DNA from: Botryllus schlosseri
Lineage: Eukaryota
Reading direction: 5' to 3'
DNA: 64,000 nucleotides
Assembly: GCA_051294905.1 (NCBI GenBank)
Contig: CM119382.1
Location: forward strand, 9,300,001-9,364,000
Shown here: positions 12,601 to 56,618 of the stretch, in pieces
How positions within the stretch are numbered: position 1 is the first letter of the stretch
Layout of the letters: each line of letters starts with the position of its first letter
Notes under the pieces: model-generated
What the model saw: the letters and a program-made list of their open reading frames with translations, nothing else
What the model was told of the DNA's origin: nothing
Databases searched by the model: none
Program-made: the position numbers and the translations under genes

Positions 12601-15600
12601 GTACCCATGATGACTACTCAGGTGCGAAGTCACAATTACAGAATTACAGGCTTTTAAAATTCAAGTTCCCAATGCCTACCAAGTTATATTTTCATCCCCT
12701 TCTGGATCGTAGATCGTGAACTGCAGCAACGCATCACAACCCTCTTCCCCAAACTGATGACACATAACCCCGAGTCTGGGGTTCATGTCGACGCTCTCGA
12801 TTTTGAGCTTTGCGACCGACTTTCCTTTGTATGATCTCAGCGACCCGCCAAACGCCAGACGTCCGAGCGATATGACCACAGTGGACGTCTCCAAGATTTG
12901 GTTTGCTTTGAAAAATTTACGATGTAGTATCGTTGGTATCACTTGCTCTCGCTTTGCGGTTTTCAAATCTCCGTCGGCGTGACAGCTTGTCTCCAGCCAG
13001 GGATGACGCAAGGCGTCTTCCGCAGACATACGTTCTCTCTTTTCGCGTGCCAAAAGCCTACGGAATTAAGAGAATGTTATGTTTGTATGCCATAATACGA
13101 TTATAGGAATAGGGTGTATTTTCTTTCCCCGATGTTTATTCATCAACTCATGATATACATACACACAATATGCGCATATGCATGCAGTTTAAACATACTT
13201 TCTGAGGAAGTATTACAATACAAATTCGCCTACCTTTCTATGAAGTCCAGAGCTTCGTCAGAAATGTCGCTCCAAGTTTCGTGATTGAAATTCCACTCGG
13301 CTTCGGTAACATTTTTCAAGGTTTCGTTATCGTTTTCTCCTTTGAAAGGAGACAGTCCAGAGAGCAAGACGTAGGTAAGCACACCCACGGACCACATATC
13401 GGTTGCACGCCCGATGGCGTCATTCAAGATAACTTCTGGCGCACAGAAATCAGGCGTTCCGTACGCGATACGTAGCGTATCACCCGGTTTCAATTGCCGG
13501 GACACTCCAAAATCGACTAGCTTCAACACATCACTCTTCCTTGTTTTGAAAAGCAAGTTCTCCGGTTTGATATCCAAATGCGCGATGTTGTGCGCATGCA
13601 AGAATTCCAATGCCTGATAAATCAATCAGTCTTGAAATGCAACACAAATTTCATGATGGAATACATACTTGACATATCTGCCGTGTAAAATCTATACAAA
13701 CGTTTTCCGTCAAGTCAAATACGTCGCTGGTAATCCGTTCAAACAAATCGCCGCCAGACACAAATTGCATGATCATAGTCTGCAGAATAATAAATTGTAC
13801 GTAGGAAAGTATGTGAGGATGTATAGCACTTGAAGGAGTGGTGAAGTAGTAGTCTAATTTGAGACAGTATTGCACTCCCAGCAAAAGTATACTACTATCC
13901 ACGTGGTGTTACCAAGTTAATCTCTGTCATCTCTGGGCAGCCTTTACTGACACTACAGTGTAAGCTGTAGTAAATTTTCGATGGTAAACATTTGTGGTTT
14001 CTGGAGACCGGTCAGCTAAAATAAATCAATTTCAAACCAGTCCGTGGAGCAAAAACGGTTGCCGACAGCTGTACTAATAGACTTGGAGAGCAATAGTCCT
14101 GGAAATGATTAGAATTCAAAATCTTTTTTGAATTTGAATTTTAAACTTGGGACCTTCATATACTTACTGAATAGCTATTCGCCTATATATGAGTGATCAA
14201 GCATCGAGATATACCACAACAAGCACAACAACAAAGTCATTAATGTTCATGCTGAATCAGACAAAAATGTGGATGTAAAATGATATCCAAATATATATAC
14301 TGTACACTACACAGTTGTCAAAGCTCTTTTCATTGCTGTCAGGGTAATTTGATTGGACTGACGAAAATCTCACAAATAAATTGCAGTTATACAGTATTAT
14401 AATCCTCACAATTTATTTCACCTATGATATCCCTCGAAGCAACAAACACTCACGGTTTCGTCTTTGGTTTCAAAGACTTCGTGCAGCATCAGCAGATTGG
14501 GATGCTCCAGCTGTTTCATGATTGCGATTTCCCTTGCGACAGCGGCTTTGTTTGCATCGTCGTCCAATTTTACGATTTTCGCGGCCCAAATTTTCTTTCC
14601 GGCTATTTCCTGAGCGCGGTGCACATTGCCGAAAGCGCCGCGACCAAGTTCCTCCAGGAGGTTGTAGCGCGTCAGAACGTTAACGTCACGATGAATCTAA
14701 GATAATTCATTGTGGTTATGGTCTAATTATAAGATACTAGAAATGTACTTTATTGCGAATTAATTTTTCTCCTTACACAAGGAAAATAAGAAGTTTTGAC
14801 TGTTTTATCTACTTCGTAGGAGTTTCCTTCCATTCTAGGTTACATAACAGCTTTTTCAACAGTGCAGAGCTAATATTCGAGTCATTGAATTCGAACTTCA
14901 GAAAAAGTGACCCAAACAGACTAATAATATATTCTTCATCATGTGGGGAACAAATTGAATGAAAGTTTAGCATCAAAGATCTTTAGTTCATTGTGTCCTC
15001 GCAAGGTTAAGGTTAAGAGCCAAAAGAGAGAGAAAGAACAGTTCATTTATGCCAGTTATATCTGCCTGTGAGGCTGCGTCTATGGGAGAGTCTCTGAAAA
15101 AGTGGTGCTGGGAATAATGGTTATTTGATCCTTGGGTAGTGACGGCTCTAATATTCTCCAATATTTGGGGGTAGCATGAAGCATAAAACAGTGTTTGGAA
15201 TATTAACAATTCAAGTAATGAAACGGCCAGCCAAATCTTACAAAAAGCTGGTTAGTCTGGAAAAAGTTGTGCCACCCTAGATCTCGGAAAATTCTCATTA
15301 TAATAATACATTCATGTACCTTGACATTTCTAGATACACAATCCTCGCCGACATCCACCATTTCGTCATAAGTAGCCGCCATAGTCGGATCTTCTTTTGT
15401 GGTAACAATACCAGTCGGCACAGACGGCACGCTCCTCCCACATTCGTTCACCGCACAAACCCTGAACTGATAACTGGTTCTCCCGGACAGACCACATACA
15501 GTATAATGAGAAGTGCTCGAAGAAGACACCTTAATCCAACGCCCGCTAAACGCCATCGATTTTTCGATAACGTATTTCAACACCGCTTTGCCTCCGTCGT

Positions 15601-18600
15601 CTTTTGGCGGATTCCAAGACAAATCGACAGCGTCGCGAGATATGCAAGACACCTGCAGCCGTTCTGGTTGAGAGGGTACGTCAGCAACAATCAGTTCCAC
15701 GGTTGCTTGATCGCTACCAAATCGGTTGTTTATGGTGATAGTATAGAACCCAGTGTCGTATCTCCAAGCATCTTTGATAGTCAGCGTTGTTGTAGACGGT
15801 GTAGTTATGATTTCATATCCACTTACTTCAGAATTGATAGCCTTGCCCGATTTAGTCCAAGTTACTAATGGAGCAGGGGAACCTTCGATAGGCACTTTCA
15901 ATACGACACGTTCGTGAATTTTATACCAAATCGGCTCTTCTGACATATATTTCGGCACCAACACTTTAGCCGGTACTTGTATTATGACTCGTACCGTATT
16001 TGTGACGTATCCTCCGACATTAAAAGCTTTAACCGTGTACGGCCCTTCGTCATTTGCATTTGCTTTCGCGATGGTCATGTAATAATTGTTTCCTCGTCCG
16101 TACCTCATGCTGTGTTTAGAATCTTTTACGATTTCTCGCGTGCCCTTGTACCATTTGATAATCGGCTTTGGATGTCCCGTTACTTTGGCATATAACGTAA
16201 CATTTTGTAGAGGTTTCGCGACTACATCGCGCATTCTCTCTATCAGCCTCGGCTTTGTGATATGCACGTTGTCCTTTATTGTGATAGAGGATGATACCTC
16301 AGATACATCTGACGTTCCGAATTGATTCTGTGCCGATATCCTGCAGAAAAACATGACACCTAAAACACCACAAACAGGATCTCTATACTCTTGGAATATT
16401 TCATTAGTGCTGTGTTGTTATTTAGTTATTTTTGTAGATAAATTTGGCTCTGTTATACATTAACTGTGCTTTGTTACATGAATATCACATGTAACATACC
16501 TGAATTCGTAGGACAAGCCCGGTTTCAATTGATATATGGGGCACACTGTTTCTGTAATGGTATTCTTGGTGGCGATTCTCCATTCTGATTGCTCCGTATC
16601 TTTGATTTCGATCAGATATTTTTTGACATGTGCCACATCTGCTGATGCCGGCTGACTCCAGTTCAGCAAACATGCATCCGCGGTAATGCCAACAACCTAC
16701 AAATAATCAATGTAAAATCGATCGTCTGAAATATATTAACGTATCCTACCGATACTTTGCTCGGAGGCAAGGGTTTTTTGCCACGCACGTCGTAGGTGCA
16801 TTTTTGGCTGGCGCCGCCAGTTATCTTCGCAGATTGCTTGATTTCCACAGACTCGCTGAGTCCACCTTCATTCGCCGCCATGATTTGAACCCGGTAAGAA
16901 CCTTCTTCAATCGCCGTCACCGAGTAATGGGTGAATCTAATTGGATTGGTGTTGCATCTACGCCACATATCCTCATCCTAGAGCAAATTACGTTTGCACA
17001 CTTCAATCGACTGAGAGAAATATAATATTGGTGGCTAACGTTAATAAAACATTGGTATATATGTAAATGATGATGGGTATGAAGCAATCATTCCGTACTG
17101 GTTTGATACACAAGGGTATTTATTTTTAAATCCAAAGATCTAATCCACTGAAATTCTTATATTTTCGTCAGATCGAGGTAAATGCCAATTTGTGAACTTG
17201 CCTTCTTCATTTCAATAAAATATCCCGAAACTTTATTCTCGTCGCAATGCTCTGGTTTATCCCAAGCCAATGATATTGTATTTTCAGTAATTTCCACAAC
17301 TCTTGGATTTTGTGGTGGTGACGGTGGTTCCAGCTGGTCCCGACATAAAACCACTGCTGTCTGCTCGCTTGGCCTGGGAAACTGATAATGAAAGTGACTA
17401 GAAAAACATTGCGACTAATCGTAGCTTACCTTCCCTCTCCAATTTTATTGATAGCAATGACACGGTGCACGTAGCTGACACCTTCAATCAGTCCGTAACT
17501 GGTGAACCAAGTCTCTTTGACGGGAGTATGAGTTGCCTTTGTCCATCTCTTTCCCTGATAAAGTAATCCACAATTAGTGAATCCTTCACGTTGTAAATTA
17601 ATATTGCATATATCATACTTTGCATAAGATAAGTATATATATATGTCTGACAATATTACACCAACCATGTTCCTGATCATTCTGTTTTCAGTTTTCTATG
17701 AGGGGGTTCGGGAGACAGTGTTGAACAAATGAGTTATATCATAATACAGGGCTACAGCTCTGCCTGCCTTGAGTTGGCTATATATATCCAGAATTAGCAG
17801 AAAATATTTACTCCAGTACGAATATTCACACAATTTCAATTCAATATAATTTATTGCTAAAAATTTTATCATCCGGCGTTATTTACAAGTCAAAACTTGA
17901 AGTAGTTATGTACAGTATTCATTATGTAAAGACGATAGTAACCAATATATGCGTTTAACTGCGTGCACTAAAACAACACCTTCATACAATAGCTCACTCC
18001 AGCCAACCAGTTGTATGACGGGGCAATAGGCAATATCACTTTCTTTAAGGAAGATGACTCAATCAAAACTACTGTATGTCAACTTGAAAGCGGCCAGCAA
18101 GATATGCTTGATCTAGAAATTTTGTATTAATGTGTATTTGCTCACATTTCTCGCCTTTCGTTCCACTACATATCCAATTATATCCGCCCCTCCATTATTA
18201 ACAGGCTCCATCCAGTTAATCGATATCGAATCTCTAGTGACCTCGGTGACTTTAGGACATCCAGGCGCCCCTGGTAAACCTGAAAAAATTGACACTCAAC
18301 TGTCACGATATCGCAACGAAATGTTACTTTCTTGGATCAATCAATTCAATAAACGTGAAATTAATCAAAAATACAAACTGTTGGACGTACTAAATTCGTA
18401 TTTGGCAGTGACACTGTCAGATAGAAGAGGCTGACCGACACCAAATCGATTTTGAGCCGAAACTCTAAAAAGATATTCGGCGTTCTCCGATAGCTTTGTA
18501 ATCTTCATCATATTTCTAAAAAATATGAAGCATATACGGTAATACTGCCGGCTACAAAGAACAATATAAAATTATCACCTTGTCACAGTATCGCTTACAA

Positions 18601-21600
18601 CAGTCCAATTTTTCCCGTGCCTTTCTTTGCGTTCGACAATGAAATTTGTAACCGCAGCACCCCCATCGAACAACGGACTACTCCAGCTCAAGTGTACAGA
18701 ATCTCCGGTGACATCGCTGAATTGAATTGGACCAACAGGAGACGATGGAACGTCTTTAAAACAAATGGTTATGAGATAACATGTCATGGAATTTGATCAA
18801 TAGTAATACTCCAACCCTATGCTTTGAAAAAGAGAGATTATGAATAATATGGCTATCATACCAAGCACTGTCACATTGAAATCAATTTCCGAGTATCCTT
18901 CGCAGTTGGTTGCGTTCAGAATATAATTTCCACGGTCTTCCACATTACATTCTTTGACTATCAGGGTAGCCAAGCCATCTTCACAAATCAAGATTGCTCT
19001 GTAATACAATAGACATTGAATATGCACCAATTGGTGATGGTTAAACAATAAGTTGTGTGATATTGAATTATTTTACTCATGTCAGTGTATATAGTAATAT
19101 AGAAATGCTATAAGTCACCTCTTGTGAATAATTTCTTTATCATCAACACGCCAAGCACAAGTTGGCAACGGACGACCAGATACTGCGACCTCTAAGCAAA
19201 TATCCTCTCTCGCTTTTACAGAAACATGCTTTGAAGCATTGTTCACAATCTTCAACGTGGGTTTTGCTGAACATAGACACGTTACATAGTATGAGTTGAT
19301 TTTCCACAAGATATAGAGTTAGTACCTGGCTGTAATTTGACGGTGATGGCGGATAATATTTCTTTGGCTGCACTGTAGCCGCATGCGTTCTTTGCTTTCA
19401 CTCGGAAATGATATTCTTTGCCTTCTTTCAGTCCGCTGACAGTGTATTTGTGATGGTTAGTGGATGTACAGCTCTTCCATTTGTCAGATCCTACAAGGAC
19501 GAATAATATTAGTAATGCGATTAATCACACACGAGACTACATTTGTTATAATTCCTTCTCTTCTCGGGAAGGGAATAATCTTCTATGTTGGAATCAAGTG
19601 ACTTAGTGCATTTGTGATTTGGTATCTAATACATCCATGACACATTGCTGATTTTCAATAGCACAGGTGCAAAATTCAGGTTCACAGTTCCAAGTTCTGT
19701 TATTCGTAATTGAAAAATAACTAAATATAGTTTCTAATAGCTTAGCATCATAGCATATAATCAACATATTTTGGTGATCACAATCATCAAGTAGCAGATG
19801 CAAAGTGATAAATTTCGAGAAAACCAACCTTTTTCTTTTGCATCCAGCTGATAACTTTCTACTGGTGATCCACCATCTTGCTGCGGGCTCTTCCATTGTA
19901 TAGTCACACTAGAGTTTGTCACTTCGGTAGCCTGAATCAGCACACAACTTTAGTATGAACGGAAAGGGTGAATTGCCAATAGCTTACTTCAATGCTAGAA
20001 GGTGGTGAGGGTGGTTCACAGGCTAGTACGGGTTTGTCGGTGTCAACGGTATCTCCTAATCCAAATTCGTTCTCAGCAGACACTCTGAAGCAATACCATA
20101 CTCCTTCTTGCAAGCCAGAGACACGATACGTGGTCTCGCGGCACCTGTCAAAATAATATGAACATACAGAATCCCCACTGCGTCTTATTGCCTTTTCTGC
20201 CTAGTTCTATTGCTGTTGCACATTTTTTACATTTATATTGCTGCTGTACAGTTGAAAATGCTTTTTTTCTTGCTGCTGCATAATTGAAAATGGTTTTCTT
20301 CAATCACTTTGATAGGAATTTGTTTATAATATTGTTTAATGATATACTCCAGTGATTCTTAACTAAAGGCTCCTCAATATTTCCTTCACAATCCTTATAA
20401 CTTTAGATGTGAATAAATAAATCACAGATACAATATTGTGAGACAAATACATTGAATATATCGCACTCAGTTCAATGAGAAAGATTATATATACATCATT
20501 TTGAATGCTTATGATTGTATGGAGAAATGGTAATAAATTAATATTACTCTTTTTCAACTGTGTTCCAAGTACGTCGAGACTGCTCTCTTCTCTCTACAAC
20601 ATAGCTTTTGATTACACTTCCCCCGTCAATCAGCGGTGGTTTCCATGCCAATAAGACGGAGTTTCGATAAACTTCTTTAACTTCGATAGATTCAGGTTTT
20701 CCAGGCGAGTCTGCGCGAAAAAGATATCATTATATAGAGAGATCATCGCGTAGAATCTACGTGCGGATATTACCTAAAACTTTGACGGTAATAGTCTCCT
20801 CTTTTGAAGACGAAGTATTTCTTGCTGATATGGTATATTGTCCAGCGTCAAACCGATTTGTCCTGTCAATCACCAACGATGCTGTGTCTCCGTGGTTTTC
20901 GACAGTTGATCTTTGTTTGAATGTACCGTCGTCTGGAGTTTTAGACCATGTCACAGTAGGTTTTGGACGACCTGAGACATCGGCCGTCAAACGCATTTGG
21001 CGTCCGGCTTTAAGAACCACAACGCTTTTCATCTTATCAGGTAGTGTAATGCAGGGATCGATCAAGATATCTTTCGATGTAACAGGGTCTGGAATCTATT
21101 AAAAACGCATTAGTATGACCTGTTGAAGAGGTTTTTGTCCACGGTTTGAATACCTTGGAAGGCATGTCGCTATCACCGATGTCGTTTACGGCGAATACAC
21201 GGAATAGATACTCTTTGTTTTCGGTCAACCCTCTGGCCGTGTAATCAGTCCCTTTGACGTACTTTGATTTGTGGGCTCTGTTGAAATTTAGAGGTATAAT
21301 AATGATAATGTCATATGGATGTGTAACGTATAAAATTTTCCGCACAGATTGTGGACTCAAATGGTAAATCACAAATTCGATTCTCTCCTATCAAGCCCAA
21401 AATTAGATATTGTCAGTAATCAACAATAGTACGATTCCAGAAATTCAATACTACTACAGCTGCGATAGCAGGAGTGCGAAAATTCCTCTTCAAATATAAC
21501 TCAAAAAACATCGGAATTTATGACCATTGAACCCAATCTTAATATCATATTTAGATACGGGTGAATTTCAATTTCCCTAATATGCCTTAATTTGAGCTCA

Positions 21601-24600
21601 AATGAAATCAGCAAAAGGTTAAGTTTTATGTGGATTGTGTGAAATATGAATCACACACTATGTGATACAGCATGTTGCATACAATACCTCTTCCATTCCA
21701 TATCTTCATCGGGTGTAATTTCCTTAATCTCCACAACATACCCGTGTATGCAAGACCCTCCATCATAACTAGGAGGTTTCCACGCTAAGCTAATGGTCGA
21801 TCTTGTTGTATCGACAACGCGGAACCGATCAGGCGTGCCTGAGAATGTTTTTGTGATAACAATACTGAAAAATTATTTGATGAAATCTTGTATCCACCTG
21901 GTTTGAACTGCGGTTCTTGAACTACAACGGGAGCCGTGGGTTCGCTGTACGGTCCGGCGCCGGCAACGTTTTCAGCACATACTCTGAATCGCAACACCGC
22001 TGAATGCCGCAGATTAGTAATCTTCATTCTTGGTTCTGTGATCTCCTCATTTCTACCACATCTGTATGGGCACAGAAAATATAACACGGATGATATTTCA
22101 TGTTTCAGGATAATGAATAACAAGCTGCCTGCTTCTGACGTTATTCAAATGTAACGTGGACAATGGGCATACAGTACATTGATGAGCCCTATTTACATGA
22201 TAAACGTAGTTATTAAACACAAAGCCAACTAAATTGCATGTTACTCACAAACAATCCCACAGTATGAATCACAATGACACAGATACAAAAAACCGGATAC
22301 TCCAATTTCCCAACCCAATCTCAATTCATATTAAATCGACATAGGAGACATATGAATATACCTGGTCCAAGTATGACCCTCAATTTGCCTCCTTTCCACA
22401 ACATAATTAGTAATCGGAGATCCACCATCGTCGACAGGTCTATCCCACATGAGAGTGACGGAATCTTTACTGGTTGTGACGATCTCAGGCACATCCGGTG
22501 CATCAGGAGGACCTATGGTGATTTGAAAATAGTATCACCTACTCTACTTAGATGTGAACCAGATCAGGCAATACCAAATTGGTTTTTGACTACACAGCAC
22601 TCAGACAAAAGCGGCGGGCTAGCACCATATTTGTTAACAGCCGACACTCTGAAGATGTATTCTGCGCCTTCTATAAGATTCTTGACGAGGCATCGGTTGG
22701 AAATGTGTTTGTCATCAACAGTAATCCAACTGAAAAGAAGTTCATAGTCATCTATGAAGTGGTAAAGAACAGTTTTTGATTTAGTATATGCATATTAGAG
22801 AATAGAGTTATTGAACATGAATGAAACTTCTTACGTTATTCTGGATATATCTTTCTTTTCAATGACATAATGTGATATCTCAGCTCCACCATTTTCCTCT
22901 GGTACACTCCAAGATATGCAACATTGGTTGCTTGATATATCAGAAATAACCATAGGACCCGACGGCGCCGATGGTACATCTGACAGATAAAAAGATACAT
23001 GTAGAGCGCAACATTTCATTTGGTATATTACAAAGCAGTCGTACCAAGTATCTTGACGTTGACCGTGACCTTTTTTGTGCCCGATTTATTCATGACACAC
23101 AAGGAATATCTCGCTGAATCTTCTCGATGACAGTCTTTGATTGAAAGTACGGTACTGGCAGATGTGCCAACTATTTTCACCCTATCTGTATTTTCCAATT
23201 CCTTTTCACCTTTGTACCAATGAACCTGCATATTAAAACATAAACGTCTTAAAATGATCTTCATAAAATCAGCCATTTGTGTAGTGAGAAAAAATACGCT
23301 AAGCACAGAAGGCGTAAGTAGCAAACTCATATACAGTACCCGTCACATGAATTAAATACTTACATGGGGTTCGGGTTTTCCATAAATTAATGCTTCCAAT
23401 TGCAGCACATTACCCGCACGTATCCACAACACATCAGCCATGAGTCTACTGTCAAGGTCGATCATAGGTGGAACTAAATTGATCAGTAATATAACACATC
23501 GATCAGCACACATCAAACGCAGTACAACATTACCGTTATCTGGTTGGCATTGAATCGGACCAAGTACTTCCGACGGTAAACCTATCGTCCCAATAGCATT
23601 TTTAGCGGTGACTCTAAATTCATATTGGTCACTAGGTGCCAATCCACCCACAGTAAACAAGCATTCGTCGACTGCGGAGAAGTTGCATTTGAGCCAACGA
23701 CCATCCGGTACATGGCGACGTTCGACATTGTATCTTTCATATCAAAGATAATTTGAAATACCCTGTTTTCGAATCTAAAATATCATATACGAACCCAACA
23801 ATTTTACATCCTCCATCTGCGCTAGGTGGCTTCCATTTCAAACAGATCGACTGCGATGACATGTTCACTATTTCAGGAGTGCCAGGCATCCCGACAATGC
23901 TGACGGCCTTCACATATTCACTCTCGTCACTTGGTTTACCGATGCCGGCTGCGTTTTCAGCGATAACTCGGAACTTGTAAGAAAGCCCTTCTTGCAGACC
24001 TTTAGGAAAACACAATGTCCGTGGTAACATTGAAAAATATTATCCCATATTTGTCAATACCGTCAACAGTAGCACTTTTGCAAGAGATTTTATCTTCAAA
24101 TACACGTTGCCATATCACTGAATGTTCTTCCTTCTTTTCAATATGGAAGCCAATCACGGGGCTTCCGCCATCTTGGGCAGGGTCTTCCCAAGACAGAGCC
24201 ACCGTGTTACAGGTGGCACCCATTATGCGGGGGACTCCGGGCTGCTTGGGTGTGGCTAAATTAGAACACGTCACTTTGAATTATGTTATATATGTGGAAC
24301 TGACGCCTGGGCTATACAGTTCTGTGAACATTACTTGATACAAAAGTCGAAAGCAAGGTTATCATTACAATGGACATTGCGTCAAGGTAAAAACGGAAAT
24401 AAACTTACTAAATTGTGCATCTGCTCTGCAAATCTCAGATAGCAGTGGTTCTCCAAGTCCAAAACGATTTTCGGCCAGCACTTTGAATTGATATTGAGTG
24501 TAGCGAGCAAGATTTTTCACCTGTCACCAACAAACATTGAAGAAATAAAGACATTATTCAATGTAAACGGAAGGGTGGTAATGACTCGACTCGAGTCACG

Positions 24601-27600
24601 ATTTTTTGGTGACTCGACTCGAGTCATTTTTTCAATTGCATGACTCGAACCAAGTCCTATGAGTTGAGGTTAGGACGGCCAAGACAGACATTTCATTGTA
24701 TCACCGAAGATTTGTAAAGTCACCACATTACTGGTATTTCGTCTATCAGTCCTGATACTTGGAAAATAGGGCCAGAAATTTTTGGCAGTACCTCCACTTG
24801 AGTAACAAAGATGACCATTTTGACCATCTCCGATTTACCTTGATAGAAGTTTTAGTGGTACATGTCGTGTAGTTAGACCAAGTGGCACGTCCAAACTCTC
24901 TGAAGTCCACGCTGTAATTGGTGACGTCACTTCCCCCGTCTTCAGAAGGAGGTCCCCACGACAGTGTGATTGATTCTGAGTTTACGTCAGAAAACAGTAT
25001 AGGTCCGGTCGGGGGTCCTGGTTTATCTAGAAGACATTACAAAGATATCACCGTCGAATTCCAGTAATGGGTCAACAAAATTCATAAACACATACCAAGC
25101 ACAGATAAGAGTATTTTTGCGTCACACCCTCCATGCTCATTTGATAAATGAATAGTGTACACCCCACTGTCGGCTTTCTGCGCATTTCTTATGAGCAAGT
25201 GTACAATCTCTTGGTCGGATGTCACACAGTATTTTTCACAACCTAAAATTGATAGTTTGTTATATTTTCCATGATATATCAGCACGTAGAGACAGTAAAG
25301 CACATTACCTTTCAGAATAGCGCCGTTGAATGACCAGACAGCAGTTGGCAAGGGGATGCCACATATTGGTATTCGAATGCTTGTGTTTGATCCAGCGCGG
25401 CATGATACAACATTATCATATATTGAGGACAAATCCAAACTTGGTAAAACTGATCATAAAACATGGAGCATTTTGTCACAAAACTAATGATATATATAAG
25501 ATTGGTATTGTTACCTATTTTGTCTTTGGTAATCACTGTCGAAAATGCATATCTCGGCTCGCTAAGCCCAGCCTTGTTACGTGCTTTCACCCTTAATTCA
25601 TACTCAGTCATAGGCTTAAGCTTTGTTATTTCGTAACAAAGACAGTTAGGCTTCGTGGTAGCGCATTCAAAGAACTTATCCGATCCTTTTTCCGCAATCT
25701 CCAACACATAACCGGTGACTCGAGACCCACCATCGTGTGACGGTTTTGCCCAATTGACGGCTATCGATGTCTTGGTTACATCACAAATATTCAACATCAA
25801 AGGAGGAGATGGTATCTCCATTACTGTGATATCATCGGATAGTTGCTTTGGCACGCCTACGCCGTATTCATTCTCCGGAGTGACTCGGAAAGAATAAGTT
25901 GATCCTTGAAACGAATAGAAGTCATTCATCATTTGCACATATATAATTACAGAAACGTTTGCATGAAAAGTAAACTGTAAGGCACACACCTTCTTGCAGT
26001 CTTTCGACTTTGTAAGTAGTACCAGCACAGTTGGTTGTCACAGTTTGCCAGCTACGTCGCGATGCTTCTTTCTTTTCGACAACATAACTTCTGACGTGTG
26101 AACCGCCGTCGTTTAGTGGAGTTTTCCAAGCCAAAACAACGTAATCTCGATTTACTTCTTGACAAATAAGGTCTTGAACGGGACCGGGAGAATCTGGAAT
26201 AGGTTTTTGTTTTGTTTTCAAACTGTGCTACATGGTGAAAATGGTATTTGCTTGACAAGGAAAGAAGATATGAAGCTACTACTTAAACCCTCGACCTACT
26301 GATTGAGAACCCGAGAGCTATATCTCGTATAATGTACACTAGGGTTGTTCAAAATAACCTTTTTTTTCTGGATTCTGGGGATTTACTGATTTAATTGTTG
26401 CCTAAATAAAAACGCTGCACACTAAATATGGCTCGACTCCAACTGGTAGATGTGAACGCACAGCAATTTATTATGAAAAAACTTTAAAAAAAACTTTAAA
26501 ATTTTATTGCCAACCCATGAAATTGTTAAGTTGTATAAAAGCACGATGCTTACCAATTTTTGCTCACTTCCAACTGGTATGAGCGAAGTAATTACAGTTG
26601 AAAATTTTTTGTTCAGTTTTTTTTTGATAATAAAATAAAAATTTTCAAACTCTTGTGCTCAATTTGTTGTGCAGAGTTTTTTTTAGGCGACCTAACAATT
26701 TAATCAGTGAATCCTCAGAATCGGAAACAAATTTATTTTTGAACAACCCTAATGTACACAGACGAGATCATGAATGAATCGTTTCACAACAAAATTCATG
26801 CAACTATGAAAAAAACATGCTGTCAGTGTTGACAATATGATAATCTGCACTTATTATGGGTGGTATACCTTACTAAATAAAGTATGCAAGAGACATTCAA
26901 GAGATTGATTGCTATCGCTATATCAAAACAGCTTGATTCGCTGGTGTCTCTAAATAAAATGTACAGGTGTCTTAAAATCGCCTTCAGCAAATATCATCTA
27001 AGAATGAACGGAGCAGAACTCTTACCTAGCACTTTCACATTCAGTCCGATCGATCTCTCGCCAACGCTATTCTCAAGAGACACATAATATTTCCCACTGT
27101 CTTCCCGAGTGGCATGGTTCACCAAAAGCACCGTCTCGTACGTCGAAGTGTGAATTTCCGCCCGTTCGAAGAGAGAATCAACCCCCTCTTTCCGCCAGAG
27201 TACTTTCGGCCGGGGCCGCCCGTGATAACCCACAGCCAGTCTCAAAGGAGCTCCGGCCCGGGCCACGTACGTGCATTTAAAATCAGCGTCCACATTGAAA
27301 TCAGGTGTTTCAAGTCTGTCGCACGCCACAAGCTGGAATTCCGTGTCAATAATTGTTATAGTCATATATGATTATCATCATATTCTTCAAATCCGGGGAG
27401 CAAAGTGGCCCCCTAACGAAAATTATTAGATTGAAGTAAAATTTTAAAATCTCAGTACTTGAATAAAATTGCTATTCTCACGCAATGCAAGATGATGATG
27501 GACTATATAATTGCGGTACATGAAGAATTGGAAATGGTTTTAGAGGTAGAGTTAATTAAAAATAAAGAATCGAAATGACAGAAGTTGCGCAATGATTTTC

Positions 27601-30600
27601 ATGTCTATGTGTAAATTAGTCCATTGGCTCATTCAAGGTTTTCAAAAGAATATACAGGATTTCTAATAAATTGATTTTTTGGACCATGTCGAATCGAAAA
27701 TTTCCCGAAACCTTCAGTATATGCTTCACTTGTTCTTTGTTTATTATTACAGTCATCATATATATACTATTATAATTTTAACTGACATCAGTAAAATTCA
27801 ATCTGTCAAAAACATACTTTCCCGCTTGCATCGGTGGGTTCGCTGACCCCGGCGACATTCACAGCGCACACTCGAACGCGATACTCTCCGCCCGGAGTTA
27901 AATTCGGAATTATGTAGTCGCAGCCTTGCACCAGTTCTTCGTTGGCCCGGATCCAATTGTCAGAACTCTCAGATTGGTCGTCGTCCCCCTCTTCACTTGG
28001 CATATCTGAGATACGAAATTGAAGGAACTTATTTTATCATGTATACAACTATCGTAAAGACCATTGGTTCGCAGCCTATACACCGTGCATGACCGACTAT
28101 CCTTCAGCATATATATTACAAAAATATGTAGAATTACCGTGATGATCCACGGCCATTGTTTCGATCACGTATCCAACGATAGGACTACCGCCGTCAAATA
28201 TTGGGGGTGACCACACCAAAGCGATTGTTGTATTTGTTGAATCAGTGGCTCTCACAATCCCGGGTGAGTCGGGTTCGCCTGCAATAAGGAAACAAGGTTA
28301 GGAAAGTGGAAGCCAAACATTTCAGTATAGAGTAAATGAAGAAATTCAGAGAAAAGATAGAAATTTTCTGTTCTTACATACATACACACACATCTCTTCC
28401 AGCGAACTAGAGTTATGGTGGAAGAAATTGGATATACCTAGCTGCGCTTAGTCTATTGAACTGTGTAAGTAAACATAGTGGAAGTTGCCCGTAGTACTGT
28501 TGATTACATACCTAAAAGGTTTATGCAACTTCTATAGTACTTGCAATACTCACAAACCGGCTCCCTGCATATGATATACGGCGAAGCTTCGCTCGGCTGA
28601 CTCAATCCGGCTGCATTTTCCGCATACACCCGAAATTCGTACTTGTTATTATGCACAAGATCAGTCACGGTAAATGTCAGATCCAATGTAGCGTCTCTCG
28701 TCACTTTAACCCATCTTGAACTTTTCCGTTCTTTTCTCTCGATATGATAACCGGTAATGGGGCTACCGCCGTCATTACCCGGTGGCATGTACGATATTGT
28801 GATGCTGTCTTCGTCAGCCGTGACACAAACTGGCTGTTCGGGAGCATCCGGGATTTTATAAGACACCTTGATGGCGACAGGACTTGACACCAGCCCAGGT
28901 CCGACTCCAAATTCATTTTGCGCAGATATGCGGAATTGATATTCCCGGTTTTTAATCAATCTCGAAACAGTGTAGGATTCAACGGTACAATTGGCCGACA
29001 CCTTTACAAAAGGACAAAAAACATGAAAATTTTTATTCTAAACCCTTCACTTTGATTACTTACAAATGACCAGCTCAATCGAGACGTTTCCCTTTTCTCG
29101 ATGACATAATTTTCTATCGAAACGCCCCCCGTATCTGAGCACGGACTCCACGCTAGCGCCACTGAATCATTCAATACGTTGCTGAAAGTGATCGGTCCTT
29201 CCGGAGCATAAGGTTTATCCAAAACTTCGACGATGCATTCCATGCTGGTAGCCGAGCAAGGATTGCGGGCGTATACTTCATAGCAGCCTCTGTCGACGCG
29301 AATTACGTCTTTGATAGCGAGCGTCGTTCCTTTGTCATCGACATGAATGGAAACCTGGTAACAATGATAATATATTCTAATTCGTTCTCAAAGTGGGCAA
29401 TATTTCCCCCTGCGTTACAATTTGGAGACATAGAGGATGAAAATGTTGCAACATTCAGTGAATTAACCGTTTGGTTTCTTGCTGATTTTAAATATAATCG
29501 ATGGATGTTGTTGGAAAAGCAGCTCAATACTTCATCCCAGCTCGAGAGAGGTGAATAAGATCAAATCGGATATATTTGCTTCAATTGAACTCGTGGATGA
29601 ATTCTCTCAACATTGTAGCAATGCATCATTGAAGTGCATCCATAACTACTTTACTTGGCAATGTTAGTTATGCAAAAATTAGTATTTCAGCATCAAGAAC
29701 TGATAAAGCAGGAGTGGTATACGAACAAAACTATTTGAGTAAGTGAAACAAGTAGAATAAATTTACTTCAGCACTACAGGAAAGTGCAAGTGCTTTGTTA
29801 GTAATGACCTCTGGGTTTTATGGGGCGATGAAGATTCATAACGGAGCAGTATAAAATAGTTTGGAAGTTCTGTTCTAATTGAACACAGGTTTACACACAA
29901 CAAAGGCACATGGGATAAATAGGCGACCCTAGACCAGTGCTGTGTATTCAGGTTTATTCACTGAATAATATTAAGTCGCCCACTATCACAAAAAACTCCA
30001 AACCTGTGAATTCGGAGTAAGTTCCTTCCCGTCACGAAGCCACTTAATTTTCGGGCTGGGCTTGCCAGTGACGGCAGCCTTCAACTTCAGATTTGCACCC
30101 GACCTAATCGTCACCCCATCCAATATTGATGCATCCAATAAGATAGAAGGAGGTTCTATCAAAAGCAATATTACCAAGATTAAGAAAAATCAATGATAAA
30201 AAAAACACAGGCGACGTACTGAAATCGTCTCGACATACGACCTTCGAACTTGGTTTTGACGGTCTGCTCAGTGTTCCAGTGGTATTGACCGCTATCACTC
30301 TGAACTCATATGTGTCACCAGTATTTAGGTCAGTTATCAGGGCGTCGCAATCTGGTATCAGTTTGTAATTGCATTTTAACCACCGAGCTGTTAAACCTAG
30401 ATAGATTCAAATTTTAGAAAATCGTTTGTATTACTGCATTCATAATATACTACCACATCTTTTCTCGACAGTATATCCTTCGATTTCCGAGCCCCCGTCC
30501 GACGTAGGCGGTGTCCAAGACAATTTGACGGAGTCGCGTGTCGAATCGAGACACGTGGGACAGCCCGGGGCACTGACAGGGTTATGGGCCCGTACAAAAT

Positions 30601-33600
30601 CACTGGCCTCGCTAGGTTTGCTGAATCCGGCTTTGTTAACGGCGAATATTCTATACTGATACTCCAGGCCCTGAAAGCAAGAAAAAAGTATTAGAAAGAG
30701 TCTTTATTTTAATCCTAAAAATAGATAGATGATACAGTAGAGCAACTTATACACAGTATTTGATATCTATCTTGGAGGTAAAAAAGTCTAATCATATCCG
30801 CATCAAATAAGTAAACTACACACATGAATCTGCCGTAAAAATGATATCTAAAATGAAATAATAGTAGCAAACATATAAAATTAGACACAATGTCATGGCT
30901 GAGTAGGGTAACAGTGTTAGTATCAGGATAAGAGGTTATCAAATAAGTCTATATTAAATGTATTCTATGCTGTGGTAGTGAATTTGAAATGCTTGGTCTT
31001 TAGTAGTCAACCGATCTCTTGGCCAAGTTACTATTAAGCCTGGAATAGACGATCCGTACGAAGCGCATGCGTTTAGTGGGATTGGTGAGATAGTGAGATT
31101 ACGTCATCGCAAGGGTAGTAAACAACATGCGCTCAGCCGTGACTTTCACGTATCGGTGATCATCACCTGCACAGTTGGGATTGTTGGGAATATTCACAAA
31201 TGTTTATTGAGCCTGACAATATTGTCGCTTTGGTGTTTGAGCTTGAGGGTTCATTCGTTTAGAGAAGTATGCCCCGTTTCAAAAAAATGGGTAAAATCTC
31301 AAGCCTTAGTAATAAAAATGTTGATATTTTAGGTGTTCTGGCTGCTTTTATGTCTTCCTACGTTGGATTCTGAATATCGATGTGTACAATGCCGAGTATG
31401 CAAAGACTCCGCATACTTAACATATCTCCAAGTCCATATCACAGAACAATATCAAGCCAACTTGTATTCCGGGCTACCTTGTTATAGTAGTCTGAATTGG
31501 TGTGCTTGTACGTACAGTTCTATACACAGCGGCAATTATATTCTCGTCTTCTATATATTCATTTTGTTTTACAACTGAAAATAGCATAAAATCGCATGGT
31601 TAATCACTGCAACTTCAGAAAGTGCGATGTCCGATCACTACAGGCCTGCCAACGCAGCTGAGCGGATGGAAAATACGCGTGAAAGGGAACGCGTGCGCGT
31701 TCTCACACTTTTGCTCTTTCTGCTCCTCATTTTTCCTCGTCCCTCTTCTCTCTCGCACGCATCCGTTTGAGAAGAGAAATAAGGAGAGAAAGAGACGGAC
31801 GCGTTTACGGATCGTCTATTCCAGGCTTAAGATGGGGCAGTAGATCACACAGTAGAGTTCAACTTATTTGAAAATTATATATAATTCAAAATCTTACCTC
31901 TGTGAGATCACTGGCAGTTATTTCTCGCTTTTCGACCGTAGTCTGTGTAATGCGTGTCCACAAAACGGCGTGCTTTTCCTTACGGTCGACGTGGTACCCA
32001 ATAATTTTCGAACCCCCGTCAGTGTTGCAAGCGCCCCATATCACATTCATTGTGTGTGCCGTGCTCTTGATGACTTCCGGTTGCGGGGGTAGGCTCGGGA
32101 CCCTTGCGTGAAGACAAAAGGTTTGAAATATAGCCAATAATGAAGTTGGTAAAATACTTTGAATAGTCTATTAAAATCTTGAATTCATCTTAATTCAGAA
32201 AGTTCTCAGATCATTTCTCTAGATCTGAACTCATAAAACCGTTCCATCATTGGTAATAGGGTTGCAATTTATATCATTTTTCTGTTTTCGAGTTTAATAC
32301 GTTTACAATTTGCCTACCCAGTCTAATTTGTCAGCAAAGAGATTTCGTTTATCCTATGAAATTGCTCCACAATATGTACTATTTGCGTATACATTACATC
32401 TATTGTATTCGTGAGTGCACAATTTAATATGATATCATAATCTGTGATTGCTAGTTTTGTTAAAAAAGATGCAATTGAAATTACATTTATTATAGGAGTT
32501 GGTAACCCTTGAAAAGTGTCGGATTGAAAAGTTGTGGGTGAATAAGTCCAATACAGTATATTATAAATGTCCTCATTCCTAAGCCTTTCCTAGTAGTAAT
32601 GTTTAGTTGATTAGGAACACATCATCACAGCAACCTGGATTGAGGCAATCAAGTCCACACTTAATCAATACTCATACCTGAATGGATATCTTGACACGAC
32701 TCTATCAGACAACACAAATTCTCCGAGACCATATTTGTTTTCCGCCGCGACCCGGAACACATATTCACATCGCGGTGCCAGCCTGGTCACATTCAAGCTC
32801 TCTCCTACGCAATTGGCCGTGACCGCGACCCACGAATCTGCACCAGTCTCTCTTTTTTCCACGACGTAGTTTGTGATGTCACAACCTCCGGTGTCTTCGG
32901 GTGAGGACCATTTTAGGAGGACGCTGTCTGCTGTGATATCGCCGAATTCGATAACGCCTTTGATCTTCTTGGGGACTCCTGCATTTGAAAAGTATAAGGT
33001 GAATGATATTTGTTGATTCTGAGATAATATTTTGAAGTTTCTCAATTTTACGTTTTATATTCGTATTTTCTTGAAATAAATCCCGAAATTGTAAAGATAA
33101 TAGCCCACTTTTCAGGCCTTTTGAAACCAGAATGAACATGAATAGCGAGTGAATAACTTACCATAGACATTCACAGTCATGCTGACTTCCTTACGACCCG
33201 CGGAATTCTCCATGGTGAAAAAATATTGCCCGGAGTCGGACCTTGCGAGATTGCACAACTGCAGATATGCAACATTCTTCGCTCTTTCGATCATGACATG
33301 TTCCGTAACTGGGATAAAAAACGTGCGATATGACATCGTAAAAGATGCGCAAAGCCAAATGTTTGTGGCCATTTGTTGGAACAGATGTAGCGTGGCCCAA
33401 ATCTATGAACTTAGTTGTAATCAATGGATGTTTTATGAAATAACACACATATCGCTTGATAAAGACCTGGTATTTAACCCAAAACACCGAATGAGGAAAA
33501 ATTGAGAGAGTATTGAGAGATTATGGCTTGAACAAGAATCTCTGATCTAGTATTAGTTAAGGCATAATTGCTACTATCAATGCTTCAATTCATAAAACAC

Positions 33601-36600
33601 ACACCTTTGAGAGGAATTCTGTTTTTGCTCCAAGACACAACAGGGCTCGGTTTACCGTAAAACGGAATTTCAAACTTGACACCGCACCCCTCCCTTGTGT
33701 CGATAACGTCTTTGACGAGGCTCAAATCAGCCTCCGGCGGTATCGTGATTTCTCTGATTCCGATTGGCCCGATAATTTCCGCATCACCGATCCCAGCCTC
33801 ATTTTCAGCCGTCACATGAAACTCGTATCTTACGCCGCTTTTTAATTTGTTGATCGCGGCTTTGGTTTTCTTGCCGTTTGAAATATCCGTCCATTTGTCA
33901 GAGTCTTTTATGGTGTATTTAATGATGTAATTACTGACTGGAGATCCACCATCGTCTTCAGGTTTTAGCCACCCCAATATTACCGACGAGTTTGTCATGT
34001 CGAGTATTCTCAAATCTGAGACCACGCCAGGAACAACTGAAAATATGCAATAATGTAGAGATGTTTCGTACGTTACACAATTGCGATATTGCGTACCTGC
34101 TGCCACTACTGGTTTTGATAATGTAGGCAGTCCCAGTCCTTGGGCGTTTTCGGCCATTACACGAAATACATAGGTGGCGCCGGTTTTCAAGTTACAGGCC
34201 TGTTGCATCAGAATGACATGACAATGAAAATGCCAATGTGCCATTTAAATAACCGAACAATGCATTATCAACATTGTGAGATTATAATTTGATATTGAAA
34301 AGGAAAACTATAGTATTTAAAAAAATCTCTCCGCCCTGGTTAATCGAAATTTCATGCCGGTAACATCATATTTGGTGATATATTTGTTGATATACAATGC
34401 TGTTTTCAATTCTTTACTAGTTGCTAACGATTACCAGATTACAAAAATATTTGGCTTTATTTCAGTATGAATATATTACTTTATTGTCTTCATTTAACAA
34501 GATAAGGAAATAATATATATTGAGAGCTTATTGAGAGGTTGCAGACCAAAGAAGTATATGGTAATATATACTTTGCTATTATTCCGATGTTCTAAGACTA
34601 ATAGCTTGCTAGATGATACTTGGCAGATTTATATCGCTTTCACAAATTCCAAGGCATATACATGTATCTTCTCATTGCTTGGCATTTGCAGAATACTTGG
34701 GACTTACTTTAAACGCAGTTTTTCTGCAGTCGCAAATTAACGGAGTCCAAGATCTCTGAGAAGTTTCCTTCCGTTCAACGGTATAACTCTCAATCTCCGA
34801 ACCTCCGTTATTTAAAGGCGCAGTCCAAGTCAACGCAACAAAATCACGTTTGCGATCTTTTACAATCACACTTTCAGGTCGATCGGGCGTGTCTGCAATA
34901 TCGCTTTGATTCAATCAAACAAAATAATCAGAAACACACGTGAAACATTACCGAGTATTTTCACGTTCACAAAAGTATCCACGGAACCGCAAGCATTTCT
35001 CAAACTGAGAAAGTATTTCCCGGTATCGTCACGGCTACAATCTTGGATCAGAAGAGTGGTTTTTGCATTCTCATTAACAACTTTGCATCTGTGTTCTGCC
35101 AGTCCCATACCCTCACCTATACCAGCAATTTGTAAGTTGGTTGATCGAACCTTATTAATAAATATGAAAGAAATATTTTCACCTCTCGACCACGATATGT
35201 TGGGAAACGGGCTTCCTTTGATTCCGACCGTCAATTTCACTTGACTACCGGCTTTAACAGTTAGAAATTTCCTCACAGCTGGGTCTATTTCATAGTCTGG
35301 CATTTCGAGACGGGCCTCTGGTTTCACAGCCTCTAAAATTTATTGTAACAAATGTTAATGTTTATTGTAACTAGAACTGCATCGTCGGTGTCACTAACCT
35401 TCTAATGTAACCGGGTCTGATATTCCACTCTTGGTAATAGCGGAGACTCGGAACACGTAAAAATTCTGATCCACAAGGTTTTTGAGCTCAATAGTGGTTT
35501 TAATTGTGTTGCTAACTAATGTCGTCCATGAATCTTCTTCCGTTTCTTGGGAACTTTCGTACTTGTCATTCGCATCAACAATTTTAGATTCTATCATATA
35601 TCCAATGATAGGGCTTCCACCGTCCCATTCCGGCTTCGTCCATGTCAGCGTTATTGAGCCCTTGGTCGTATCTTTTACACGGATATTTTCTGGTTCATCA
35701 GGCGGTTCTAATGAAGACATGAATGTTAATTTACTATCATTTTGGATATACTGAGATCTATGCCTAGCAAGTTTAGATGCGGCATTGTGTCATTATAATT
35801 CATGGAAACTTCAGTTAATTAAATGGTTATTCCAAATTTAGTCTAGCTCGTAATTATGAAGCCAATTAGGCACAATCAATGCCGTCATATTCTTACTGCT
35901 ATGTGGACAAGATCATCACAGATTGACAGAATAATGTGTTAGCTTTGAGTTAAGATAATTTTTGACGATACTCAATTCTATTCATAACATGATATCGGTA
36001 AAATAGAATGTTATGGCGTGATTATAAGGTAGATTGCTTACAACAATGAAACATGTCTCAGATATCTGCAAGTATTCCATGATGGGGCACATTAAAAAAT
36101 TACAATATGTTCAGCCATTACATTCTTACCGATTGGTCTTGTCATCATGACAGGGACGTTACTGCAGACACAAGGACCGATTCCTGCTTTATTTTGGGCA
36201 GCGACTCTAAATTCATACTCTTTGCCAGTGATGAGACCGACTGCGTGGAACCTGAATAATATAATTTAAATAAATCACGACTTTATTCAGAGTTAGAAAT
36301 ATAAAAATACAAATCCTTATCTCAAGGAAAATTTTGGCCATTGATGAACACATGACCTGAATTGAGCTTATTCCAAATACAAATTTTTGCAGTCAACTTA
36401 TAGTAACACGTAAGGAATCCAAGATTACAAATCAGATCTATATTTGGAGTCAAGATTCAACAGGATTCAGTATCCAAGATTTTACATCACAAAGCAGTAC
36501 TGAGGCAGACAATAAAGATATCCAAACACAATTTCATGTATTTAAATTCAAGCGAAGTTGATAGTTTACCCACAAAATTAAAAATCTACTGGACTTGACC

Positions 36601-56587: not shown

Positions 56588-56618
<31 letters not shown>

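What the first reader, a model, noticed from the sequence alone, without database searches (positions are those of the whole stretch)
16765..16830. Seven domains (A160-A166 equivalents) are missing; last super-repeat fuses directly to the A167-like Fn3
Seen: after five complete 11-domain repeats the last has only 7 domains, followed by Fn-Ig-Ig-Fn-kinase, giving four Fn3 in a row. The junction (KITGGASQKCTYDVRGKKPLPP) lies inside one exon (16750-16977), so no skipped exons can hide there. Established/recalled: human titin has C11 (A153-A163) then Ig-Ig-Fn-Fn-Ig-Ig-Fn (A164-A170). The YVHRV...PPQNPRV domains match A158-A159, and ITETV...KVTGHPKP matches A167-A168. Inference: at about 4 nm per domain the kinase sits about 30 nm closer to the C-zone, predicting different bare-zone/thick-filament geometry. 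Either this lineage deleted the block or vertebrates gained it.
Basis: partly seen in the sequence, partly recalled or inferred. Interest (0 to 1): 0.72.

Follow-up and report, generated by a model that had tools for sequence, protein, structure and literature searches.

The report
Sea-squirt titin lacks seven domains
In this sea-squirt genome the giant muscle protein titin has cleanly lost seven consecutive domains just before its kinase. Other sea squirts, fish, amphioxus and invertebrate twitchins all keep this block, so the loss is a natural test of titin's proposed role as a ruler for the myosin filament.

Summary
The window carries the 3' part of a titin/connectin gene on the minus strand. 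My spliced model has 71 Fn3/Ig domains and then the kinase. The order is a partial super-repeat, five complete 11-domain super-repeats, a 7-domain stub (Ig-Fn-Fn-Ig-Fn-Fn-Fn), then Fn-Ig-Ig-Fn-kinase.

The junction lies inside one 228-nt exon (16977-16750). The reading frame is open, there are no Ns, and no domain remnants or flanking repeats.

Best-hit mapping to seven tunicate-type sequences and two fish titins is colinear. Domains D56-D67 match A148-A159 and D68-D71 match A167-A170. Exactly A160-A166 (about 690 residues) is absent.

Ciona savignyi titin, seven further tunicate-type sequences, fish, amphioxus and twitchins all have Ig-Ig-Fn-Fn-Ig-Ig-Fn before the kinase. So this lineage deleted the block; vertebrates did not gain it.

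Both breakpoints lie in inter-domain linkers, and D67 is not a chimera.

Three things remain unproven. I found no independent read or transcript support. I could not check for a second titin copy elsewhere in the genome. The structural consequence is inferred: about 27 nm, or roughly two myosin crowns, and no material for the titin-beta loop.

The parts
21081..58417 (-). Five complete 11-domain C-type super-repeats (D6-D60, Ig-Fn-Fn-Ig-Fn-Fn-Fn-Ig-Fn-Fn-Fn). D1-D5 upstream (63734-58442) are positions 7-11 of an earlier repeat.
   Evidence: Domain order from the spliced model. Position-specific best hits between repeats.
16828..21056 (-). Truncated last super-repeat, D61-D67 (Ig-Fn-Fn-Ig-Fn-Fn-Fn). 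These are positions 1-7, equivalent to A153-A159.
   Evidence: D62-D67 best match positions 2-7 of the other repeats. D61-D67 map one-to-one to A153-A159 of tunicate and fish references.
16828..17312 (-). D67, an Fn3 equivalent to A159. It is split by the GC-AG intron 17201-16978.
   Evidence: A159 scores 93-100 bits against 54-65 for the runner-up. It is A159-like along its whole length and is not an A159/A166 chimera.
16750..16977 (-). The single exon that carries the junction: second half of D67, the linker, and the first nine residues of D68.
   Evidence: Translation is open. Splice sites seen. Titin Fn3 C-terminal half found in PDB chains.
16762..16827 (-). A 22-residue stretch between the profile ends of D67 and D68, against 9-12 for other Fn-Fn pairs here. 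It holds GGASQKCTYDVRGKK. The part YDV..PLPPSKVS resembles the A166/A167 linker HDVPLSPTQPKAS of other tunicates.
   Evidence: Gap lengths. Linker comparison.
16283..16761 (-). D68, an Fn3 equivalent to A167. It spans introns 16749-16697 and 16499-16341.
   Evidence: A167 is the best hit in all nine references, 64-85 bits against 54-64. It shares the signature G-x-x-x-D-x-C-x-L-x-W-x-Q-P. It is the most diverged Fn3 of the set.
15404..16252 (-). D69 Ig, D70 Ig and D71 Fn3, equivalent to A168-A170, inside the 1,021-nt exon 16340-15320.
   Evidence: PDB 2NZI titin matched over query 30-327 and chain 5-304, E 2e-71. Pfam I-set x2 plus fn3. One-to-one mapping.
12700..14696 (-). Titin kinase exons, downstream of D71.
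   Evidence: Kinase motifs in open segments 14696-14421, 13625-13233 and 13065-12679. Pfam Pkinase E 1.5e-36.

Best explanation
This is a genuine, lineage-specific, in-frame genomic deletion of about 2.1 kb of coding sequence within the titin gene of this ascidian.

The deletion removed the last four domains of the final C-zone super-repeat (equivalents of A160-A163, Ig-Fn-Fn-Fn). It also removed the first three P-zone domains (A164-A166, Ig-Ig-Fn). The break points lie in the linker after A159 and in the linker before A167, so no domain is truncated or chimeric and the protein stays readable through to the kinase.

Shown here: the absence of the block, the one-to-one orthology of the flanking domains, the presence of the block in other tunicates and in outgroups, and the intact reading frame.

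Inferred: the rigid titin segment between the last full super-repeat and the kinase is shorter by seven domains. At 43 nm per 11 domains that is about 27 nm, close to two 14.3-nm myosin crown levels. The segment proposed to form the titin-beta bow-tie loop in mammalian heart (starting at A158) is mostly gone. The thick filament of this animal is therefore predicted to have fewer crowns next to the bare zone and a single titin conformation there. This resembles what was reported for the engineered mouse lacking A164-A167.
For: Domain order and exon-internal junction.

Colinear one-to-one mapping D56-D67 to A148-A159 and D68-D71 to A167-A170, with large margins, in P0010, P0167-P0170, P0172 (Ciona savignyi titin H2YFD6), P0173 and fish P0221 and P0238. 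Pairwise BLAST gives two colinear blocks that leave about 700 subject residues unmatched.

All eight tunicate-type references have ...IFFIFFFIFFF-IIFFIIF-kinase. In a maximum-likelihood tree they form one clade with the window, apart from fish and amphioxus, with support 89/93.

IIFFIIF precedes the kinase in 52 of 64 kinase-bearing relatives retrieved. These include mosquito, crinoid, acorn-worm and rotifer twitchins and amphioxus titin.

D67 is A159-like throughout. No remnants, no Ns and no repeats at the junction.

A167 next to the scar is unusually diverged, 33-36% against 66-68% among the other tunicates. This fits changed constraints after loss of its neighbour.

Background for the structural inference comes from PMC12981300 and PMC10665186. 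It covers 11 domains = 43 nm = 3 crowns, the titin-beta loop from A158, and the mouse lacking A164-167, which loses the beta conformation and has thick filaments about 43-50 nm shorter per half.
Against: The evidence comes from one assembly only. No close relative of this species and no transcript was found in the protein collections, so the junction has no independent read or RNA support. I could not inspect the rest of the genome for a second titin copy. The branching order within the tunicate clade is unresolved, so the age of the deletion is unknown. All functional consequences are extrapolated from mammals.
Confidence: 0.75

Rival explanations
1. Assembly artefact or rare structural variant. 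The species really has the seven domains, and the assembled haplotype dropped about 2.1 kb or more.
For: The gene is highly repetitive, which is where assemblers fail. There is no independent sequence of this species to compare with.
Against: The break joins non-homologous points, an Fn-to-Ig linker and an Fn-to-Fn linker, not two alike repeats. D67 is not a hybrid. There are no flanking repeats and no Ns. The frame is kept, splice sites are canonical, and a novel linker has evolved. A167 beside the scar has diverged far more than its neighbours, which takes evolutionary time.
Confidence: 0.12
2. The block exists elsewhere, either as alternatively used exons outside the window or in a paralogous titin gene that supplies the canonical P-zone.
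For: Earlier scan notes list titin features on other pieces of this genome. It is unclear whether those belong to the same gene.
Against: The junction is inside one exon, and the flanking introns are 224 and 53 nt, so no cassette can sit there. Exons far away cannot be spliced between two halves of one exon. Other chordates outside teleosts have a single titin gene according to PMC12198301.
Confidence: 0.08
3. The short form is ancestral, and vertebrates (and others) gained the seven domains.
Against: Ciona savignyi and seven other tunicate-type sequences, fish, amphioxus and protostome, echinoderm and hemichordate twitchins all have Ig-Ig-Fn-Fn-Ig-Ig-Fn before the kinase. The window nests inside the tunicate clade.
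Confidence: 0.02

Closest known systems
Vertebrate titin, end of C-zone plus P-zone (A153-A170) and kinase
   Same: Both have 11-domain C-type super-repeats with position-specific conservation. A153-A159 and A167-A170 have one-to-one counterparts here. A168-A170 match the solved human fragment 2NZI end to end. The kinase follows A170.
   Different: A160-A166 are absent. As a result the last super-repeat stops at position 7, the first Ig-Ig tandem of the P-zone is missing, and four Fn3 stand in a row.
Titin of other tunicates (Ciona savignyi H2YFD6 = P0172; unnamed P0010, P0167-P0170, P0173, P0212)
   Same: They fall in the same clade. Flanking domains are 40-63% identical.
   Different: They keep the full IFFF-IIFF-IIF-kinase order. 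In the unnamed sequences A148 to the kinase start is one uninterrupted reading frame of about 2,500 residues, whereas here the region is cut by 23 introns.
Engineered mouse lacking titin A164-A167 (PMC12981300)
   Same: It removes part of the same region, including the first Ig-Ig tandem. It therefore gives the best available expectation: loss of the titin-beta conformation, a C-zone shifted by about 43 nm and shorter thick filaments.
   Different: The mouse deletion is four domains (about 16 nm), includes A167 and keeps A160-A163. The natural deletion here is seven domains, keeps A167 and also removes the end of the last super-repeat.
Twitchin/projectin of invertebrates
   Same: They have the same Ig-Ig-Fn just before the kinase, and in them too Ig-Ig-Fn-Fn-Ig-Ig-Fn precedes the kinase.
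   Different: Their body is built of Fn-Fn-Ig units, not 11-domain super-repeats. The window's gene is a titin, not a twitchin.

Membership tests
Chordate titin/connectin (A-band to kinase part) | 11-domain C-type super-repeat Ig-Fn-Fn-Ig-Fn-Fn-Fn-Ig-Fn-Fn-Fn, repeated | tested here: met
   Five complete copies, D6-D60.
Chordate titin/connectin (A-band to kinase part) | Domains at the same super-repeat position are more alike than domains at other positions | tested here: met
   All-against-all domain BLAST: for most Fn3 the best hits are at the same position, for example position 7 at 42-54% identity.
Chordate titin/connectin (A-band to kinase part) | Serine/threonine kinase directly after the last Fn3 (A170) | tested here: met
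   Pfam Pkinase E 1.5e-36 at 13625-13233. Kinase motifs at 14696-14421.
Chordate titin/connectin (A-band to kinase part) | A168-A170 (Ig-Ig-Fn) orthologous to the human fragment | tested here: met
   2NZI matched end to end, E 2e-71. The tandem 3LCY, which I recall as A164-A165, scores only 66 bits.
Chordate titin/connectin (A-band to kinase part) | Complete P-zone Ig-Ig-Fn-Fn-Ig-Ig-Fn (A164-A170) before the kinase | tested here: not met
   Only Fn-Ig-Ig-Fn is present. 52 of 64 retrieved kinase-bearing relatives have the full pattern.
Chordate titin/connectin (A-band to kinase part) | Last C-zone super-repeat complete (positions 8-11, A160-A163) | tested here: not met
   D61-D67 cover positions 1-7 only, and the next domain is the A167 equivalent.
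Twitchin/projectin | Body made of repeated Fn-Fn-Ig units without 11-domain super-repeats | tested here: not met
   The window shows the 11-domain pattern. Twitchins P0002, P0008 and P0020 show IFF units. The tree places the window with tunicate titins.

The most novel reading that the evidence does not exclude
This ascidian assembles working striated-muscle thick filaments on a titin that lacks the whole A160-A166 segment. That segment includes the first P-zone Ig-Ig tandem, which the mouse-deletion paper (PMC12981300) describes as conserved from twitchin to titin and essential for thick filament arrangement. If so, its filaments should be about two crowns (roughly 27-29 nm) shorter per half near the bare zone and should have no titin-beta loop. 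That would be a natural experiment on the molecular-ruler model and on what the loop is for.
Probability: 0.35. Interest if true: 0.75.

Novelty: new variant of a known kind. Interest (0 to 1): 0.6.

Why it matters
Titin's A-band part is thought to act as a template that sets thick filament length and crown register. The P-zone pattern Ig-Ig-Fn-Fn-Ig-Ig-Fn is one of its most conserved features, from twitchin to human titin. A 2026 mouse study reported that removing only A164-A167 abolishes one of two titin conformations and shortens the filament by a whole 43-nm repeat.

This is a chordate that has lost seven domains of the region naturally and keeps an otherwise intact gene. The deleted length is close to two crown spacings.

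That gives a comparative system, this species against Ciona, to test three things: whether filament length and bare-zone geometry follow titin's domain count, whether the beta loop is dispensable, and how neighbouring domains adapt. Here A167 is strongly diverged.

Tried and rejected
- **Chimeric Fn3 from unequal crossing-over between A159 and A166.** Rejected. D67 scores as A159 in every 15-residue block up to its last strand.
- **Hidden or decayed exons.** The six-frame profile scan of 14500-21000 found nothing above 2 bits outside exons.
- **Repeat-mediated collapse.** Only two short chance repeats in 15000-19000, none at the junction.
- **Alternative register (last Ig-Fn-Fn-Fn = positions 8-11, so only three domains missing).** Rejected by the preceding Ig-Fn-Fn and by position-specific hits.
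- **Independent sequences of this species or close kin.** The 340-residue exon found nothing above 37% identity. The junction ORF found no candidate.
- **P0225 (EukProt), which seemed to lack part of the P-zone.** It is a fish-like model, 65-80% identical to fish titin, with skipped domains. It is not a second case.
- **Hanashima et al. 2012 on Ciona connectin.** The paper is not held, so I could not check what was published on the Ciona A-band.
- **My first splice scoring.** It missed a GC-AG donor and mis-set five inter-domain junctions. These were corrected by hand. Two Ig domains still carry likely unremoved in-frame introns. This does not affect the region at issue.

Full report
**What is in the window.** The window has no Ns. 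Its minus strand carries a long series of open segments with Fn3, Ig and kinase motifs. I trained Fn3 and Ig profiles on the window's own long exons and mapped all hits. I then chose splice junctions by profile score plus splice-site matrices learnt from the clear cases. GC donors were allowed, and five junctions were corrected by hand. The resulting model has 91 exons and 7,122 residues without a stop. It holds 71 domains between 63734 and 15404, and the kinase exons follow at 14696-12700.

**The observation.** The domain string is F I FFF, then IFFIFFFIFFF five times, then IFFIFFF, then F II F, then the kinase. The exon 16977-16750 is 76 codons, phase 0 at both ends. It reads from the middle of D67, through the linker GGASQKCTYDVRGKK, into D68. 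The intron upstream (17201-16978, 224 nt) has a GC donor with the classic AAG|GCAAGT context. The intron downstream is 53 nt. Neither can hold a domain. A six-frame scan of 14500-21000 found no profile match above 2 bits outside the exons. No repeats flank the junction. Pfam independently gives I-set x2 plus fn3 for the large exon 16339-15320, a partial fn3 for 16696-16502 and Pkinase for 13625-13233.

**Register.** "Ig-Fn-Fn-Fn" occurs twice in a super-repeat, so the stub could in principle be positions 8-11. It is not. It is preceded by Ig-Fn-Fn. In an all-against-all comparison of the window's own domains, D62-D67 best match positions 2, 3, 4, 5, 6 and 7 of the other repeats. D68 matches no position in particular.

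**Orthology of single domains.** An exhaustive profile search with the exon 16339-15320 returned 150 giant relatives. Among them is P0010, a 2,504-residue single reading frame on a 228-kb ENA contig. Its order is FFIFFFIFFIFFFIFFF-IIFFIIF-kinase. Domains are numbered back from the kinase as in human titin, with A170 next to the kinase. On that numbering the window's D56-D67 hit A148-A159 in order and D68-D71 hit A167-A170, each with a wide margin over the second-best domain. For example, D67 scores 99 bits against A159 and 64 against the runner-up, D68 scores 80 against A167 and 63, and D71 scores 135 against A170 and 79.

A search from P0010 found more references:
- four sequences 79-84% identical to it (P0167-P0170);
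- Ciona savignyi titin H2YFD6 (P0172, 66% identical, full coverage);
- P0173 (65%) and the more distant P0212;
- fish titins (41-42%).

All eight tunicate-type sequences and the two fish titins used (P0221, P0238) have IFFIFFFIFFF-IIFFIIF-kinase. The window's mapping is the same against P0010, P0167-P0170, P0172, P0173 and the two fish titins for every Fn3. Against the distant P0212, and for the weakly discriminating Ig D64, a few best hits go elsewhere. BLAST of the model tail against P0172 and P0173 gives two colinear blocks that end at D67/A159 and resume before A167, leaving about 700 subject residues unmatched. D69-D71 match the solved human fragment 2NZI over its whole length (E 2e-71); I recall that entry as A168-A170. 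The other Ig tandem, 3LCY, which I recall as A164-A165, scores far lower. The missing block is therefore A160-A166. The alternative A159-A165 is excluded.

**Nature of the break.** A multiple alignment of D67 with nine A159 and nine A166 sequences shows it is A159-like in every block up to its last strand. So this was not an in-register recombination between two Fn3 domains. After the last strand comes GGASQKCT, which has no counterpart. Then comes YDV-RGKK-PLPPSKVS, which resembles the A166/A167 linker HDVPLSPTQPKAS of other tunicates. D68 keeps the A167 signature around the first tryptophan. Both ends of the deletion thus lie in linkers, and the frame is kept.

**Polarity.** Of 64 kinase-bearing relatives retrieved, 52 have IIFFIIF before the kinase. 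Named examples are twitchins of Anopheles, a crinoid, an acorn worm and a rotifer, and amphioxus titin-like protein. The twelve exceptions break down as follows:
- six are all-Ig, obscurin-type proteins;
- three have a domain-sized gap that my profiles missed;
- one is a truncated hagfish entry;
- one is a fish-like mis-predicted model;
- one, P0204, has one Ig fewer and was not followed up.

In a maximum-likelihood tree of the eleven shared domains (A153-A159 plus A167-A170), the window groups with Ciona savignyi and the seven unnamed sequences. The group stands apart from fish and amphioxus with support 89/93. The window's own branch is long, and the order inside the clade is unresolved. The block was therefore present in the tunicate ancestor and earlier, and was deleted on the window's lineage. 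An earlier scan note names the genome Botryllus schlosseri. I did not verify this.

**After-effects visible in sequence.** A167, now abutting A159, is the most diverged Fn3 of the region. It is 33-36% identical to other tunicates, whose A167 copies are 66-68% alike among themselves. Its neighbours lie at 41-62%. The spacing between D67 and D68 is 22 residues, against 9-12 for other Fn-Fn pairs.

**How it most likely works (inference).** In mammals 11 domains span 43 nm, which equals three myosin crown levels (PMC12981300). Seven domains are then about 27 nm, close to two crown levels. In cardiac filaments one titin of each pair is proposed to form a bow-tie loop starting at A158 (PMC10665186). 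The mouse lacking A164-A167 shows a single A168-170 epitope stripe instead of two. Its C-zone is shifted by about 43 nm and its half filaments are about 50 nm shorter. The authors stress that this segment is conserved from twitchin to titin. By analogy, the ascidian titin cannot build that loop and should template fewer crowns next to the bare zone. None of this is tested.

**What limits the claim.** I found no sequence of this species or of a close relative in the protein collections. The junction therefore rests on one assembly. I could not search the rest of the genome for a second titin copy, and earlier notes list titin features on other pieces. I could not read the one paper on Ciona connectin structure. 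The features of the scar argue against an artefact: non-homologous ends, a kept frame, a new linker and a diverged neighbour. I put the real-deletion reading at about 0.75.

Noticed in passing
window 23883-15320 versus L001:2001-9515: The stretch equivalent to A148 through the start of the kinase is one uninterrupted reading frame of about 2,500 residues in seven other tunicate-type sequences. In this window it is cut by 23 introns (median intron in the whole model 156 nt). This points to massive intron gain in this lineage.
   Followed up: partly
window 17201-16978 and 59493-59432: Two GC-AG introns with the donor context AAG|GCAAGT. A GT-only splice search mis-models both exons.
   Followed up: yes
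window 59216-58442, 51671-50258, 44451-43517, 36145-35325, 28258-27330, 21830-21081: The Fn3 at super-repeat position 11 carries an insertion in all six copies (profile span 94-113 residues against 86-90 elsewhere). The insertion is visibly rich in Asp/Glu in at least four of them.
   Followed up: no
window about 35175-35096 and 25290-25235: Two Ig domains (D39, D53) contain 20-26 extra in-frame residues that look like short in-frame introns my model did not remove.
   Followed up: no
window 61221-61039 and 60772-60605: Two near-identical ORF-like copies, about 450 nt apart, inside the 1.9-kb intron 61642-59711. Probably a repeated or mobile element.
   Followed up: no
window 16761-16283: The A167-equivalent Fn3 next to the deletion is far more diverged from other tunicates (33-36%) than any neighbouring Fn3 (41-62%). 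A167 is well conserved among the other tunicates (66-68%).
   Followed up: partly
protein P0204 (ENA, 3,930 residues): A twitchin-like protein whose kinase is preceded by F-I-F-F-I-I-F, one Ig fewer than the usual pattern, with no domain-sized gap. It could be another natural P-zone variant or a gene-model error.
   Followed up: no
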